Of a stretch of DNA of 64,000 nucleotides, positions 45,503 to 58,176 are shown in pieces. This DNA is from Octopus sinensis (taxonomy: Eukaryota), in NCBI RefSeq assembly GCF_006345805.1, contig NC_043021.1, forward strand, positions 11,222,001 through 11,286,000, in the 5' to 3' direction. The notes under the pieces are model-generated. The model did not search any database. It saw nothing but the letters and a program-made list of their open reading frames with translations, and had not been told where the DNA came from. Positions within the stretch are counted from its first letter, which is position 1. Each line of letters starts with the position of its first letter. A program made the translations under genes and the position numbers.

Positions 45503-45618
45503 ATGCCAAGGTATTATATGGCTAGCAGTGGTAGCAAGATTATGGATTCCAAGAGAGAGGATTACAAAAAGAAATCCATCGACACCGGGTCTCGAACGAA
45601 TATTGGTAAAAAATCCAG
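45503..45618 (+). CDS. Nested antisense gene, coding exon 1 (116 nt, ends phase 2): MPRYYMASSGSKIMDSKREDYKKKSIDTGSRTNIGKKS
   Basis: ATG in gaaaATG context with an in-frame upstream TGA (45482-45484). Strong donor CAG|gtgagt. Phase 2 matches exon 2. Confidence 0.7.
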
Positions 45619-47309
45619 GTGAGTGTAGATATAATGATCATATTACAGTTTTTGTTGTTGTTGTTGTTGTTGTTGGGGGGTGGGGTAGCAGTGAGGGTGA
45701 AAGTGGGGGTGATGGTGGTGATTTCAATGGGATTATGGTGGTGGTTTCAGTGGGTGGTGATGGTGGTTGATGGGGGGGGGTCTGACAGCCTACTTAGTTT
45801 GGCTGGGACCCAGCTGATCCGATCAAAAGCATTCTAATGATGACTATCCCATTCCACCATTCCACCAATCCAAGTGCAGCAAGCCCAGGACCACAATACA
45901 TTACCCAATGAGTGTGTCCTTTACTAAAACATTAAGGTATGACATTTGAGGGATAACTGGCTGCTATTTTTTTTTTTTTTTTGGTGGGAGGGTACCCATT
46001 GAGAGACTGTCTTGTTGATTCGAATGGTTGTTGTTGTTATTGTTGTTGCTGCTTTGTTTGTTTGTTGAGCGTCTCAAGATTGTCCGAAACATGGTCCTTT
46101 GCTAGTCATAAGATCCGCAGAAGAGAAAGCAGGTCAACCCCCGACACCGAGAGCATCGACGGATGGATGAGTGCACATCCAGGCTCAGTGGTTGCATAGG
46201 AAGTCAGGGACAAGAAACAGGAAGAAAGAGTGAGAGAAAGTTGGAGCGAAAGAGTACAAAGAGTACTGCCGGAGCCTCGTGGAGCTTTAGGTGTTTTGCT
46301 CAATAAACACACACAACGCCCAGTCTGGGAATCGAAACCGCAATCCTCTGACCGCGAGGCCGCTGTCCTAACCATTGGGCCATTGCGCCTCCACTTGTTG
46401 TTGCTGCTTAACCACCACTGACATTACAACCAGCCATAGGTCAAGCCCTGATGAAAGCTGTTCCAGCCATGACCACTCCATGTGGACATTTTTTTTGCTG
46501 CCTTGTTTTGATGCAGGCGTGGGTACAAATATATAAAAACAAGAAGTGTGGAGTGAATCTAATATACTTTTTATCTTTTACCCGTTTCAGTAATTTGACT
46601 GTGGCCATGCTGGGGCACCGCTTTCAAGAATTTTAGTTGAATGAATTGATCCCTACTCTTTTTGGTTTTGTTTTTGCTTTTTTAAGCTTGTGCCAAACCA
46701 CTAAGTTACAGGGATGTAAACACACCAACATTGGTTGTCAAGCAGTGGGGGGTGGGAGTAGGAAGGCACAAACACAAAGTCACACACTCATAGATATATA
46801 AAAGACATGAAGTAGTAGTAAGCTACAAACATTTTTACAAACAAAACCTTCAGATATTTCCTCAATAATTAATCATGTGAACAAATGGATACAATAGCAA
46901 CCACACACCTTCCTAGCACAACTGATAATAGATAAGGCATGTTTAAATTAGATGATAATTATCAATCTTCTTAATTATATATGGCGTAGGGGTGGCTGCA
47001 TGGTAAGAAGCTTGCTTCCCAACCACATGGTTCCAGGTTCAGTCCCACTACGTGGCACCTTGGGCAAGTGTTTTCTACTATAGCCTTCAGGCTGACCAAA
47101 GCCTTGTGAGTGGATCTTGTAAATGAAAACTGAACGAAGCCTATCATGTATGTGTGTGTATGTGTAGGCATGGCTGTGTAGTAAGACGCTTCCCAACCAC
47201 ATGGTTCCAAGTTCAGTCCCACTGCATGGTACCTTGTGCTTTATTTGTTCTAACCACTTCCCACTTGTTTAAGTAGAACAGGAAAAGTACATACACATGA
47301 ATATGTTTT

Positions 47310-47560
47310 CCCATTACAACTGCCTCACCACCAGATGAAGAATGTCTTCAGGGAAGCACAGTGTGTTGTATGAAGGTCTATACTGGCAATAGTAATGTTG
47401 TAAGAAGCATAGAGTTCTTACTATAAATACCTTCATGATACAATCAGCTCAGCTTTTGAAAACCAGAAGAGACACAACCACACTTTCTAAATATATGTGG
47501 GATCTGAAAGACAGAGAACCACACTTTCTAAATATATGTGGGATCTGAAAGACAGAGATA
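47310..47560 (+). mobile_element. Penelope-like GIY-YIG endonuclease remnant with an internal 41-bp tandem duplication
   Basis: ECLQ.S.V.YE-like and TTLSKYMWDLKDR motifs. accacactttctaaatatatgtgggatctgaaagacagaga occurs twice (47478-47559). Confidence 0.55.
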
Positions 47561-48162
47561 TTCATAACTTCAAAATTTTTACTGATCATTCATTGAAACC
47601 ACACTTTCATATACATGATTTCAGATGTCATCATTCTACCTTCATTCCCTCTATTTTTCATCTTTTTTCTTTCTTTTCTTTTTTCTAGCTTCGTACAAAC
47701 ATCTGCACACTCTCCTAGTCTATTTTCCTTTTTCTTCTTACTAACGGCGCATCTTATATCTTATTACCTTGATCCTTGATATTTTGACGCCTCCACAAAA
47801 AAACCCATTATTTAATTCATTTAAGTAATATTAGTAATGCTCTATCACTTCAGACCTACTTCAATAAATGAATACTAGGCTCATGTTCTGGTCTGATCTT
47901 CCATCTGACAGTAATCTATCAATCCACTTTAACAGGCTCCAATAAAATGAATACCAAACAACAGTCATTCATGACAATGTCATTATATTTATCAATATTG
48001 CAACTACATGTTTCTATGGCTTGCTCCACAATTTTATTCCTGGTAACGTCTCCTTTCACCAACTACACTACCACTCTCCAAGTTATCATGTTTTTACACT
48101 TTTTTATACTCTTTTACATGTTGGGGGGGGCCAAACACAGACACACAAACATATACACACTC

Positions 48163-48199
<37 letters not shown>

Positions 48200-48483
48200 T
48201 AAGAGAGTGGTCACTATGTGGCTCACTCTGGCACTAGAAATAGATCCAATAGGTTTCAGCCACAAAATAAATGTTTCATGCTGGCTTTCATTGGAAACAT
48301 TTATTTTGTGGCTGAAACCTATTGGATCTATTTCTAGTGCCAGAGTGAGCCACATAGTGACCACTCTCTTATATTTATGTATAAAATTTTATCATAATCC
48401 AGGTTTTTTTGTGCACTGGGCCACTTGGAGTTAAATGGATGTACTATTGAATTAGTATCCAATTTTCTCACCCTTATTAATTG

Positions 48484-48521
<38 letters not shown>

Positions 48522-48836
48522 GCTTCTTTCAGCTTCTGTCTACCAAATCCACTCACAAGGCTTTGGTTGGCCCAAGGATATGATAGAAGACACCTGCCCA
48601 AGGTGCCACACAGTGGGACTGAACCCAGAACGATGTGGTTGGTAAGAAAGCTACTTACCACACAACCACTCCTGCGCCTAGTTATGTTTTTACCTAGACA
48701 TTTATACACTCTCTTCTAATCACCTTTATTACTACTATCATCATCATCATCATCATTATCACTGTTGCTGTTGTTATCACTAGACTGTTTCTTAATGACC
48801 TTACTAGTACTACTACTGCATCTATTACTGTTGTTA

Positions 48837-48871
<35 letters not shown>

Positions 48872-56103: not shown

Positions 56104-56212
56104 ATAAAAGAATTAGAACAGGCGTGCAGAGACAGAGGTACGGATCCAGGAATACACAAGCACATGTCCTTCGATGAACTGAATAAGGTAGAAATATTTG
56201 AAAAAGCATCAG
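56104..56212 (+). CDS. Nested antisense gene, exon 4 (109 nt, phase 0 to 1): IKELEQACRDRGTDPGIHKHMSFDELNKVEIFEKAS
   Basis: Acceptor ttatgttttccag|ATA, donor CAG|gtacag (weaker alternative AAG|gtagaa after 56187). Confidence 0.8.
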
Positions 56213-56817
56213 GTACAGCAATCATTTTGCTCATTTATTGTTGTCGTTGTTGTAGTAATTTTACCTGTTTTAGGGAGTTTTTTTTTACATTGTTTGTTGT
56301 CTGTTTTTAATGAGAGGAACAAGAAGGCATTTTTTTTAACACCCCCCCCCACCACCACCACCGCCGCCGCCACCACCACCACCACCATGTTTACACAGAA
56401 GATTGTATGTGAACGACAATCTTGCGATGCTTGTTTACAATTAGCATGTGATGTCAAGACAAGGACACACACACACACACACATCATCATCATCAACATC
56501 ATTTAATGTCCACTTTCTATGCTGGCATGAGTTAGATGACACCAGGTTCCAGGGTGATTTGGCATTGTTTCTATGGCTGAATGACCTTCCTAATGCCAAC
56601 CATTCCAAGAGCGCAATGGGTGCTTTTTTTTATGTACCACTGTTAAGGGGTACCTTCATGTGCCACCAGCATGGCTACCAGTTATGTGACACTAGCATCA
56701 GTTGCAACTAAAACTTCACTTCACCTGACAAGTCTTCTCGAGCACAGCATATCAGCAAGGTTGGTTTATATATATTCAAAATGTGACCGCATGTGTACCG
56801 TTGGTGATTTTTTTTCC

Positions 56818-56963
56818 TTTGTCTTCCCTTCTCCTATGTTTCCGACGAAGAGCTCCGCTCCAAACGTAAAACCCTCCTTCTTTCCTGAGCGTCCAATAAT
56901 ACTATATTTGTTCCACGTCTTCGCGTTGTCGTGTTTTTTTGTGCTTTCTTGTTTGGATTAACT
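56818..56963 (+). mobile_element. Penelope-like terminal-repeat fragment carrying a degenerate minimal hammerhead
   Basis: Shares ctgagcgtccaataat...ttgtttggattaact with 28563-28650, 28813-28905 and 41256-41348. Hammerhead-like core at 56838-56872. Confidence 0.5.
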
Positions 56964-56969
56964 TTATAT

Positions 56970-57007
<38 letters not shown>

Positions 57008-58095
57008 TCATCATCATTTAACACCCATGTTCCCTGCTAGCATGGGTGGGACGGTACCACAAGAGCCGGCCAGACTGAAGCCAGACTGAAGCCAGACTTC
57101 TGCACCAGACTTCTGCAACTGTTTTGGAAGGATTTTTACAGCTGGATGCCCTTCCTAACACCAACCACTCAGCAGAGTGGACCTTAGTACTGTCTATGTG
57201 GCACAAGCACAGGTGAGGTCAGTTTTGGCAAGGTTTTTACAGCTGGATGCCCTTCCTAACACCAACCACTTTACAGTGTGGACTGGGTGCTTTTAAGTGG
57301 CACCTGCACTGACAGGGTCACCAAGTAATTTCAAGGCAAAATCCTTTAAGAGGGGAGGAAGCATTGAAGGAGGTGATGATGATGAAAAGGTTATAGTGAG
57401 ACAGATACAGGTGTCTTGCTGTAGAGGAATTACAAGGTCACATGACCGGAGAGAGATCAGAAGACAGAAACAGGTGTGCTACCACGGCACAGGTGTGGCT
57501 GTGTGGTAAGAAGTTTGCTTCTCAACCACATGGTTCTGGGTTCAGTCCCACTGCATGGCACTTTGGGTGTCTTCTACTATAGCCTTAGGCTGACCAAAGC
57601 ATTGTGGGTGGATTTGGTAGATAGAAACTGAAAGAAACCCATCGTTTGAGGGGTACTTTTTTTTTACATGCCAGTTATGCGCCACTGGCTTTGACCACGA
57701 CTACAATCTCACTTGGCTTGATGGGTCTTCCCAAGCACAGGATATCCTTTTCTACTCTAGGCACAAGGCCCGAAATTTGGGGTGGGGGGGCAGTCGATTA
57801 GGTTGACCCCAGTACACAACTAGTACTTAATTTATCAACCCCAAAAGGATGAAAGGCAAAGTCAACCTCTCCACCAAAATTACTGGCATTGTGCCAAATT
57901 TTCAAACCAATATCTACTTATAGAAATCGCATTTATTATAAATAACAAAAATGTTGAAATTAAACAAAAAAAAAAGAAAAAGAAAAGGCTAAATAAACAG
58001 TTTTTTTTGGTTTTTAATTATTTTGTTGTTTAATTGTATATTTATTCTGTTTTACTCATTTATTTTTGTTTCTTAATTTTTTTTCATTTCGACAG

Positions 58096-58166
58096 ACGAC
58101 AACCCTGCAGAGAGGAAAGGTTCCCGGCACCGTGGCGTCAATGTAGACCAGAGAGGCAAATTATAA
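58096..58166 (+). CDS. Nested antisense gene, terminal exon: (D)DNPAERKGSRHRGVNVDQRGKL*
   Basis: Very strong acceptor ttttttttcatttcgacag|AC; TAA at 58164-58166. The five exons sum to 528 nt = 175 aa + stop. Confidence 0.78.
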
Positions 58167-58170
58167 AGCT

Positions 58171-58176
58171 AATAAA
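58171..58176 (+). terminator. AATAAA polyadenylation signal of the nested gene
   Basis: Canonical hexamer 4 nt downstream of the predicted TAA. Confidence 0.55.

What the first reader, a model, noticed from the sequence alone, without database searches (positions are those of the whole stretch)
45503..58176. Complete unannotated-looking gene nested antisense inside the 21.8-kb RNF215 intron
Seen in sequence: five plus-strand GT-AG exons (45503-45618, 50443-50572, 53936-54037, 56104-56212, 58096-58166) whose phases chain exactly (2, 0, 0, 1) into one 528-nt ORF. It encodes 175 aa (MPRYYMASSG...PFLVPSAIQLAGRQRMKPSDAILTPKEVLDCSYLRLSEAKIKELEQACRDRGTDPGIHKHM...RGKL*) with AATAAA 4 nt after the stop. 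It lies wholly between RNF215 exons 59578 and 37750, on the opposite strand, and the ORF track misses it except for exon 2. The protein is small, hydrophilic and basic, with a more ordered central core (CSYLRLS...C...G...IH.HM) that I cannot assign to a named family. Inference: a host/nested antisense pair with possible transcriptional interference or tissue-exclusive expression.
Basis: partly seen in the sequence, partly recalled or inferred. Interest (0 to 1): 0.85.

Follow-up and report, generated by a model that had tools for sequence, protein, structure and literature searches.

The report
Octopus C16orf78-like gene inside RNF215 intron
The five-exon gene is real, but it is already annotated in Octopus sinensis as "C16orf78-like", a member of an old, uncharacterised animal protein family (DUF4638) that is testis-specific in mammals, and its position inside an RNF215 intron is an ordinary nested-gene arrangement that four other molluscs do not share.

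Summary
Five plus-strand GT-AG exons chain into a 528-nt ORF of 175 aa, with AATAAA just after the stop.

The window is Octopus sinensis chromosome CM016883.1. NCBI already annotates this gene with the same start and stop, as "uncharacterized protein C16orf78-like" (176 aa, one extra Ala at the exon 4/5 junction).

The consensus is P.E.L.C.YLRLS..N...LE...R..G.DPGIH.H. It occurs in molluscs, a priapulid, amphioxus and mammals, and every named member is uncharacterised. The family alignment runs without a gap across the exon 3/4 junction, which independently validates that splice.

The host on the minus strand is an RNF215-like TM/RING-H2 gene. Its 21,827-nt intron (37751-59577) holds the whole nested CDS.

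The nesting is absent in a chiton, an abalone, a mussel and a sea slug. Regulatory coupling between host and nested gene is therefore unsupported.

AlphaFold gives a disordered N-terminus and a confident small helical core. That core has no relative in the PDB by sequence or by fold.

The likely role is a male germ-cell protein, inferred from human and pig data. The finding is an ordinary, already known gene of low interest.

The parts
45503..45618 (+). Exon 1 of the nested gene (CDS part). It starts at the ATG, has an in-frame stop 21 nt upstream, and ends at donor CAG|GTGAGT.
   Evidence: The start coordinate is the same as in the NCBI model. No homology was detected; the region is predicted disordered.
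50443..50572 (+). Exon 2. It encodes a basic, hydrophilic, low-complexity region.
   Evidence: acceptor ...TTTGTAG|, donor TCG|GTAACA. It is present in the NCBI protein P0001. No homology outside octopus.
53936..54037 (+). Exon 3. It encodes the first half of the DUF4638 core (...LTPKEVLDCSYLRLSEAK).
   Evidence: tblastn hits from many family members fall at 53942-54040, and the Pfam hit covers it.
56104..56212 (+). Exon 4. It encodes the second half of the DUF4638 core (IKELEQACRDRGTDPGIHKHMSFDELNKVEIFEKAS).
   Evidence: The O. bimaculoides protein A0A0L8GU59 (P0002) matches it in 32 of 36 residues and then reads into the intron.
58096..58166 (+). Exon 5 with the stop codon, using the canonical AG acceptor at 58096. 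The NCBI 176-aa model implies a start at 58093.
   Evidence: A brute-force test of junction pairs shows that the NCBI protein needs a GT..GA intron running from donor 56212 to acceptor 58093.
58171..58176 (+). AATAAA poly(A) signal, 4 nt after the stop. Further candidate signals lie at 58905 and 59229.
   Evidence: Its use has not been tested.
37751..59577 (-). Host intron of 21,827 nt that contains the whole nested CDS.
   Evidence: One search gives the GT and AG boundaries. One search shows bird RNF215 aligning contiguously across the two flanking exons.
59578..59685 (-). Host RNF215-like exon upstream of the intron (KSTKVTLWSTCGRSS...).
   Evidence: It aligns to the bird RNF215 segment 'VTLTLWSTCG'.
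37646..37750 (-). Host exon downstream of the intron. It encodes a hydrophobic, transmembrane-like segment (ADPGNFWNFFYCGLLSLMMLFVLKTRRR...).
34903..35986 (-). The last two host exons (about 35986-35879 and 35013-34903), which together encode a complete C-terminal RING-H2 finger and the stop codon.
   Evidence: The spliced peptide matches zf-RING_2 over positions 1-44 of 44, E=5.9e-15.

Best explanation
This is the Octopus sinensis member of the C16orf78/DUF4638 protein family. It is a real, intact, five-exon gene that RefSeq already carries. It sits on the opposite strand inside a 21.8-kb intron of the RNF215-like RING E3 ligase gene.

The protein has two parts. The N-terminal region of about 95 residues is basic and predicted disordered. 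The C-terminal module of about 50 residues is predicted confidently as three short helices, and it holds all seven residues that are invariant across the family (L105, C107, R111, L112, G128, H134, H136 in the 176-aa numbering).

Most likely role (inferred, not shown): like mammalian C16orf78, it is a male germ-cell (spermatid or sperm) protein. Its conserved C-terminal module would dock onto a conserved partner, possibly with the invariant Cys and two His residues helping to bind a metal, while the variable disordered N-terminus acts as a linker or charge tail.

The nested position is best read as an incidental, lineage-specific arrangement of the kind common in large animal introns. It is not evidence of a functional host/guest pair.
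For: Gene and annotation: the window is identical to GCA_006345805.1 CM016883.1 over 28,498 of 28,498 compared bases.

Family: Pfam DUF4638 scores 43.2 bits against a cut-off of 27. A search of 1.84 billion representative proteins found 48 relatives, all sharing the same core. Named members come from Haliotis, Mytilus, Mya, Nucella, Elysia, Plakobranchus, unionid mussels, a chiton, Priapulus, Branchiostoma and rodents ('C16orf78 homolog').

Splice validation: the family motif is gapless across the exon 3/4 junction.

Selection: the O. bimaculoides exon 4 is identical in 32 of 36 residues, and all four changes (R/K, D/E, A/P, S/T) lie outside the invariant columns.

Structure: AlphaFold2 gives pLDDT 91-97 for residues 100-140, and 50-63 for residues 1-90.

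Host: the RNF215-like identity, RING-H2 finger and intron boundaries are shown.

Role: human C16orf78 is testis-restricted by RT-PCR (PMC9141640). It is strongly reduced in spermatogenic arrest (PMC12431239) and is abundant in boar testis (PMC7249385).
Against: No octopus expression data were available, so germ-cell expression is extrapolated across more than 500 million years from mammals.

Only the C-terminal fifth of the Pfam profile (positions 205-258 of 262) is matched. The octopus protein lacks the longer N-terminal regions of most mollusc relatives (291-477 aa).

No solved structure or fold relative exists to suggest a biochemical activity.

The second Cys of the core (C123) is replaced by I, V or M in many members. 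A classical four-ligand zinc site within one chain is therefore unlikely.

Exons 1, 2 and 5 are supported only by the NCBI model, and that model disagrees with a canonical acceptor by 3 nt.
Confidence: 0.85

Rival explanations
1. The host and nested genes form a functional antisense pair: transcription of one interferes with the other, or the two are expressed in mutually exclusive tissues.
For: The geometry is right. The whole nested CDS lies antisense inside one host intron, and its 3' end is about 1.4 kb from the upstream host exon.
Against: There are no expression data. The arrangement is not conserved. The chiton homologue lies between a PARP gene and a lipid desaturase gene. The abalone homologue lies next to a FAM92 gene. 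The mussel homologue lies next to a Myb/ZZ gene. The Elysia homologue lies next to a TTC21-like gene. None sits inside a RING gene. From general knowledge, nested opposite-strand genes are common in large metazoan introns and usually show no obligate coupling.
Confidence: 0.08
2. The locus is a decaying or truncated remnant of a longer DUF4638 gene, that is, a pseudogene or a non-functional short form. The NCBI model would then be an over-prediction.
For: The octopus protein is 175-176 aa, against 291-477 aa in most named mollusc relatives. No N-terminal family motifs were found anywhere in the window. The NCBI model needs a non-canonical GT..GA intron.
Against: The ORF is intact across five exons with good splice sites. 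All seven family-invariant residues are retained. The O. bimaculoides exon 4 is 89% identical, and every difference lies outside the invariant columns. Similarly short forms of 157-182 aa exist in the sea slugs Plakobranchus and Elysia.
Confidence: 0.05
3. The five-exon chain is a chance ORF assembled from fortuitous GT/AG sites in repeat-rich intronic DNA.
For: With 12.7 kb and a free choice of splice sites, long chained ORFs can be built by chance. Exons 1, 2 and 5 have no homology.
Against: The Pfam hit is above the gathering threshold. There are 48 relatives across Bilateria. The motif is reconstituted exactly by the exon 3/4 splice. An independent NCBI model has identical CDS ends.
Confidence: 0.02

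Closest known systems
Mammalian C16orf78 (Pfam PF15472, DUF4638)
   Same: It shares the C-terminal module P.E.L.C.YLRLS..N...L...[CIVM][RK]..G....IH.H followed by a short helix. Every named member is annotated only as uncharacterised. The octopus hit scores above the Pfam gathering threshold.
   Different: Mammalian proteins are about 270 aa and have an N-terminal region that the octopus protein does not match; only profile positions 205-258 of 262 align. Mammals have 'DVDIHPH' where molluscs have 'DPGIHxH'. From my own knowledge, not tested here, the human gene lies on chromosome 16 and RNF215 on chromosome 22, so the human gene is not nested in RNF215.
Mollusc DUF4638 homologues (e.g. Haliotis rubra XP_046565038.1, Mytilus galloprovincialis XP_076092235.1, Liolophura sinensis XP_064612020.1, Elysia chlorotica RUS77346.1)
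   Same: They have the same core at 38-53% identity over the matched stretch. The sea-slug forms (157-182 aa) are as short as the octopus protein.
   Different: Most are 291-477 aa, with extra conserved N-terminal motifs that are absent from the octopus window. In the chiton, abalone and mussel the core sits in a single terminal exon, whereas in octopus a phase-0 intron splits it (LRLSEAK|IKELEQ). Elysia has an intron two codons further upstream (LRLNQ|DQV). None is nested in an RNF215-like gene.
Nested (intron-hosted, opposite-strand) genes of metazoan genomes
   Same: A complete coding gene lies inside one large intron of a host gene on the other strand.
   Different: Nothing distinguishes it from the ordinary case. 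There is no evidence of shared regulation or of conservation of the arrangement.

Membership tests
Pfam PF15472 / DUF4638 (C16orf78 family) | Whole-protein score at or above the Pfam gathering threshold (27 bits) | tested here: met
   43.2 bits, E=5.2e-11. The database also precomputes PF15472 for the NCBI protein P0001.
Pfam PF15472 / DUF4638 (C16orf78 family) | Conserved C-terminal core with invariant L, C, R, L, G, H, H (P.E.L.C.YLRLS...G.DPGIH.H) | tested here: met
   All seven invariant columns of a 43-sequence alignment are present in the octopus protein: L105, C107, R111, L112, G128, H134, H136.
Pfam PF15472 / DUF4638 (C16orf78 family) | Match to the N-terminal four-fifths of the Pfam profile (positions 1-204) | tested here: not met
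   Only profile positions 205-258 of 262 align. The non-mammalian relatives found likewise share only the C-terminal core with the octopus protein, so this part appears specific to the mammalian clade rather than defining the wider family.
Pfam PF15472 / DUF4638 (C16orf78 family) | Testis-restricted expression, as reported for the human gene | not testable with these tools
   No cephalopod expression data were available. The human and pig data come from PMC9141640, PMC12431239 and PMC7249385.
RNF215 (host gene) | C-terminal RING-H2 finger | tested here: met
   The spliced peptide from 35920-35879 plus 35013-34906 matches zf-RING_2 over positions 1-44 of 44, E=5.9e-15. The stop codon follows directly.
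RNF215 (host gene) | Sequence similarity to named RNF215 proteins across the pre-TM, TM and RING segments | tested here: met
   The best named hits are 'RING finger protein 215' (Zonotrichia) and 'RN215' (Ardeotis), at E of about 1e-11 and 30% identity over 96-99% of a 107-aa query joined from three exons.
RNF215 (host gene) | N-terminal luminal (PA-like) domain and signal peptide | not tested
   The 5' part of the host gene (574-aa product) extends beyond what was examined, and the octopus host protein itself was not retrieved.
Nested gene | The whole transcription unit lies inside one intron of the host | tested here: inconclusive
   The CDS (45503-58166) lies wholly inside the intron 37751-59577. 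UTR exons and the true transcript ends cannot be seen without RNA data.

The most novel reading that the evidence does not exclude
The DUF4638 C-terminal module is about 50 residues with an invariant Cys and a His-x-His. It is conserved from priapulids and molluscs to mammals and has no sequence or fold relative in the PDB. It could be a previously undescribed docking or metal-binding domain of the sperm or ciliary machinery. The 175-aa octopus protein would then be one of its minimal natural forms, and in the octopus lineage the module has acquired an intron and moved into RNF215. Nothing here excludes this reading, but nothing beyond conservation and mammalian testis expression supports it.
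Probability: 0.2. Interest if true: 0.4.

Novelty: already known. Interest (0 to 1): 0.12.

Why it matters
For genome annotation it matters little. The gene is already in RefSeq, the family is already in Pfam, and nested antisense genes are commonplace.

Three modest points of value remain:

- The C16orf78/DUF4638 family is an ancient bilaterian family defined only by a short C-terminal module. It has no known structure or function, and its one known trait is testis specificity in mammals.
- Short invertebrate members such as this one are convenient minimal constructs for working out what the module binds.
- The RefSeq model and the genome disagree by one codon at the exon 4/5 acceptor. Cephalopod annotators should check this against reads.

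Tried and rejected
- **PDB by sequence.** A single-sequence search found nothing. A 43-sequence profile found only spurious repeat matches to designer PPR proteins, with every individual stretch insignificant.
- **PDB by fold.** Foldseek with the AlphaFold model gave a best E of 5, so no relative.
- **Profile search of the 5.8-billion-protein index.** It returned only two proteins and added one fact: P0002 is from O. bimaculoides.
- **O. bimaculoides locus.** I tried to fetch it for dN/dS and synteny, but the protein is not on record with a contig. P0003 sits only on short metagenome or metatranscriptome contigs.
- **Missing N-terminal exons.** tblastn of all family members against the window found nothing outside exons 3 and 4.
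- **A canonical splice for the RefSeq 176-aa protein.** I searched all donor and acceptor pairs. The only solution is a GT..GA intron, and the intron contains no AG|CAG|GT micro-exon.
- **Non-coding RNAs.** An Rfam scan of the whole window found nothing.
- **Literature.** No paper mentions DUF4638. The C16orf78 papers give only expression and association data, with no mechanism.
- **PP1-docking (RVxF) motif.** I considered reading the core this way and rejected it by eye, because the K-V-E-I-F stretch does not fit the consensus and is not conserved.
- **Structure prediction, first attempt.** It ran after I replaced that row with P0001.
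Full report
**1. The observation**

Each is bounded by a GT donor and by an AG acceptor that follows a polypyrimidine tract. Joined, they give a 528-nt ORF that translates to exactly the 175-aa protein quoted.

The donors are CAG|GTGAGT, TCG|GTAACA, AAG|GTGACA and CAG|GTACAG, and the introns are 4824, 3363, 2066 and 1883 nt. The ATG has A at -3 and an in-frame stop 21 nt upstream. 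AATAAA lies at 58171-58176, 4 nt after the stop.

**2. Where the window comes from, and whether the gene is unannotated**

A search with the 175-aa protein returned one near-identical protein, P0001. It is 176 aa, 99% identical, and named by NCBI "uncharacterized protein C16orf78-like [Octopus sinensis]".

Its encoding contig is chromosome CM016883.1 of assembly GCA_006345805.1. The fetched locus L001 is identical to the window at all 28,498 overlapping bases. The window is therefore CM016883.1:11222001-11286000.

So the gene is already annotated.

I tested every donor and acceptor pair around the exon 4/5 junction. The only way to obtain the NCBI protein from this DNA is donor 56212 joined to acceptor 58093. 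That makes a GT..GA intron, and no AG|CAG|GT micro-exon exists in the intron. Three explanations remain:
- Transcripts really carry the extra CAG.
- The assembly or the sequenced individual differs at 'CGACAG'.

Only reads can decide between them.

**3. What the protein is**

Pfam places residues 98-151 in PF15472 (DUF4638) at 43.2 bits, against a gathering threshold of 27, with E=5.2e-11. The match covers profile positions 205-258 of 262.

An exhaustive HMMER search of 1.84 billion representative proteins found 48 relatives at E<=1e-3. All share one stretch, with the consensus P.E.L.C.YLRLS..N[VI]..LE...R..G.DPGIH.H.D. In an alignment of 43 core sequences seven columns are invariant. In the numbering of the 176-aa protein they are L105, C107, R111, L112, G128, H134 and H136.

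Cluster look-ups named these members:

| Group | Members |
|---|---|
| Gastropods | Haliotis rubra, Nucella lapillus, Elysia chlorotica, Plakobranchus ocellatus |
| Bivalves | Mytilus spp., Mya arenaria, Sinanodonta, Potamilus |
| Chiton | Liolophura sinensis |
| Priapulid | Priapulus caudatus |
| Amphioxus | Branchiostoma |
| Rodents | Apodemus, Psammomys ("uncharacterized protein C16orf78 homolog") |

Every named member is uncharacterised.

**4. Independent support for the gene model**

tblastn of all family members against the window hits only exons 3 and 4 (53942-54040 and 56077-56238). The motif is reconstituted without a gap by the exon 3/4 splice: octopus LRLSEAK|IKELEQ aligns with LRLSKSN-VEELEQ in relatives. 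This validates that junction without RNA data.

P0002 is a 93-aa Octopus bimaculoides protein (A0A0L8GU59). It is exon 4 followed by read-through into the intron. It is identical to O. sinensis in 32 of the 36 exon-4 residues. All four changes (R/K, D/E, A/P, S/T) lie outside the invariant columns.

Exons 1, 2 and 5 have no detectable homology. They rest on the NCBI model and on ORF and splice logic.

The octopus protein is short. Most named mollusc relatives are 291-477 aa and have additional N-terminal motifs, and I found none of these in the window. Sea-slug members are equally short, at 157-182 aa. With all invariant residues kept, I do not read the octopus form as a pseudogene.

**5. The host gene and the nesting**

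The gene catalogue lists a 574-aa product on the minus strand that spans all of L001. I mapped four minus-strand exons:

| Coordinates | Content |
|---|---|
| 59685-59578 | KSTKVTLWSTCGRSS... |
| 37750-37646 | ADPGNFWNFFYCGLLSLMMLFVLKTRRR..., a hydrophobic TM-like segment |
| about 35986-35879 | first half of the RING finger |
| 35013-34903 | second half of the RING finger, and the stop codon |

The last two exons together give a complete RING-H2 finger (zf-RING_2 positions 1-44 of 44, E=5.9e-15) followed by the stop codon.

A query joined from three of these exons (59685-59578, 37750-37646 and 35013-34903) has as its best named hits "RING finger protein 215" and "RN215" from birds, at E of about 1e-11 and 30% identity over 96-99% of the query. 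Bird RNF215 runs contiguously from the 59.6-kb exon into the 37.7-kb exon. The 21,827-nt interval 37751-59577 is therefore one intron with no missing host coding exon.

The nested CDS lies wholly inside that intron on the other strand. Whether UTR exons extend beyond the intron cannot be seen without RNA data.

**6. Is the nesting conserved?**

It is not conserved outside cephalopods, as far as I could test:

| Species | Neighbours of the DUF4638 gene |
|---|---|
| Chiton (Liolophura) | between a PARP gene and a lipid desaturase gene |
| Haliotis | next to a FAM92 gene |
| Mytilus | next to a Myb/ZZ gene |
| Elysia | next to a TTC21-like TPR gene |

No overlapping RING gene is present in any of the four. 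I could not obtain other cephalopod loci.

The arrangement is therefore lineage-specific, which gives no support to a functional host/guest relationship.

**7. Gene structure compared across molluscs**

In the chiton, abalone and mussel the whole core lies in a single last exon. In octopus a phase-0 intron splits the core, and another intron follows it. Elysia also has a phase-0 intron in the core, but two codons further upstream (LRLNQ|DQV). This is a small curiosity. It could reflect intron gain or intron sliding, and I did not follow it further.

**8. Structure and mechanism**

AlphaFold2, run with the 43-sequence alignment, gives mean pLDDT 67.9:
- Residues 1-90 are at 50-63 and have no secondary structure.
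- Residues 100-140 are at 91-97.
- Helices are predicted at 101-105, 114-126 and 139-155.
- The invariant G.DPGIH.H forms the loop between the second and third helices.

Foldseek against the PDB finds nothing (best E=5). Neither a sequence search nor a profile search finds a solved relative. No biochemical activity can therefore be transferred.

What is known of the family comes from mammals:
- Human C16orf78 is testis-restricted by RT-PCR (PMC9141640).
- It is among the most strongly reduced transcripts in spermatogenic arrest (PMC12431239).
- It is abundant in boar testis and differs between boars of high and low sperm hyperactive motility (PMC7249385).

My best mechanistic reading is inference only. 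The protein is a male germ-cell protein. Its conserved C-terminal helical module docks on a conserved partner, and the invariant Cys and His-x-His possibly contribute metal ligands. The position of the second Cys is often I, V or M, so a self-contained four-ligand zinc site is unlikely. The disordered basic N-terminus would be a variable tail.

I give about 0.95 to "real gene and DUF4638 member" and about 0.5 to the germ-cell role in octopus.

**9. Verdict**

The regulatory inference is untested and is not helped by synteny.

This is an already known gene of a known but functionally dark family, in an ordinary nested arrangement. Interest is low.

The most novel reading not excluded is that the DUF4638 module is an undescribed docking or metal-binding domain of sperm biology. 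This short octopus protein would then be a handy minimal example.

Noticed in passing
window 56212/58093-58096: The RefSeq 176-aa protein (KASADDNP) can be derived from this assembly only through a non-canonical GT..GA intron with its acceptor at 58093. The canonical AG acceptor at 58096 gives 175 aa. The cause could be transcript evidence overriding the genome, a polymorphism, or an assembly error in 'CGACAG'.
   Followed up: partly
window 54037/56104; L006, L007, L008, L009: The DUF4638 core is split by a phase-0 intron in octopus (LRLSEAK|IKELEQ). It is also split in Elysia, but two codons further upstream (LRLNQ|DQV). In the chiton, abalone and mussel it lies in one terminal exon. This suggests intron gain or sliding inside a highly conserved motif.
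   Followed up: partly
L007 15563-24253; L009 30738-37291: In Haliotis the DUF4638 gene is next to a FAM92 gene, and in Elysia it is next to a TTC21-like TPR gene. From my own knowledge, both neighbour families are cilium-related. This is probably coincidence, but it fits a sperm or cilium theme.
   Followed up: no
window 10478-10577: An assembly gap of exactly 100 N.
   Followed up: no
window 3918-4848 (+): Overlapping ORF fragments look like a decayed Tc1/mariner-type transposase (...HHDNAPVHTA...SPYSPDLALCDFFLF). Pfam gives only a sub-threshold rve match (17 bits against a cut-off of 32.6).
   Followed up: partly
window about 38400-40700 (-), inside the host intron upstream of the nested gene: A string of broken ORFs looks like a decayed non-LTR retrotransposon. 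One fragment (39412-39621) gives a sub-threshold RVT_1 match (18.6 bits, E=0.0017).
   Followed up: partly
window, many copies on both strands, e.g. 1938-2060, 42004-42108, 48552-48716, 50228-50446, 51097-51258: A short interspersed repeat translates in one frame as ...LPKVPRSGTEPGTMWLVSKLLTTQPL... and recurs throughout the window. One copy ends about 60 nt upstream of exon 2 of the nested gene.
   Followed up: no
window about 14100-18600: Several kilobases of trinucleotide-type simple sequence produce long runs of Asp, Met, Val, Ser, His and Ile in the six frames. GC skew reaches 0.90 in 16001-18000. This tract accounts for many of the long spurious ORFs.
   Followed up: no
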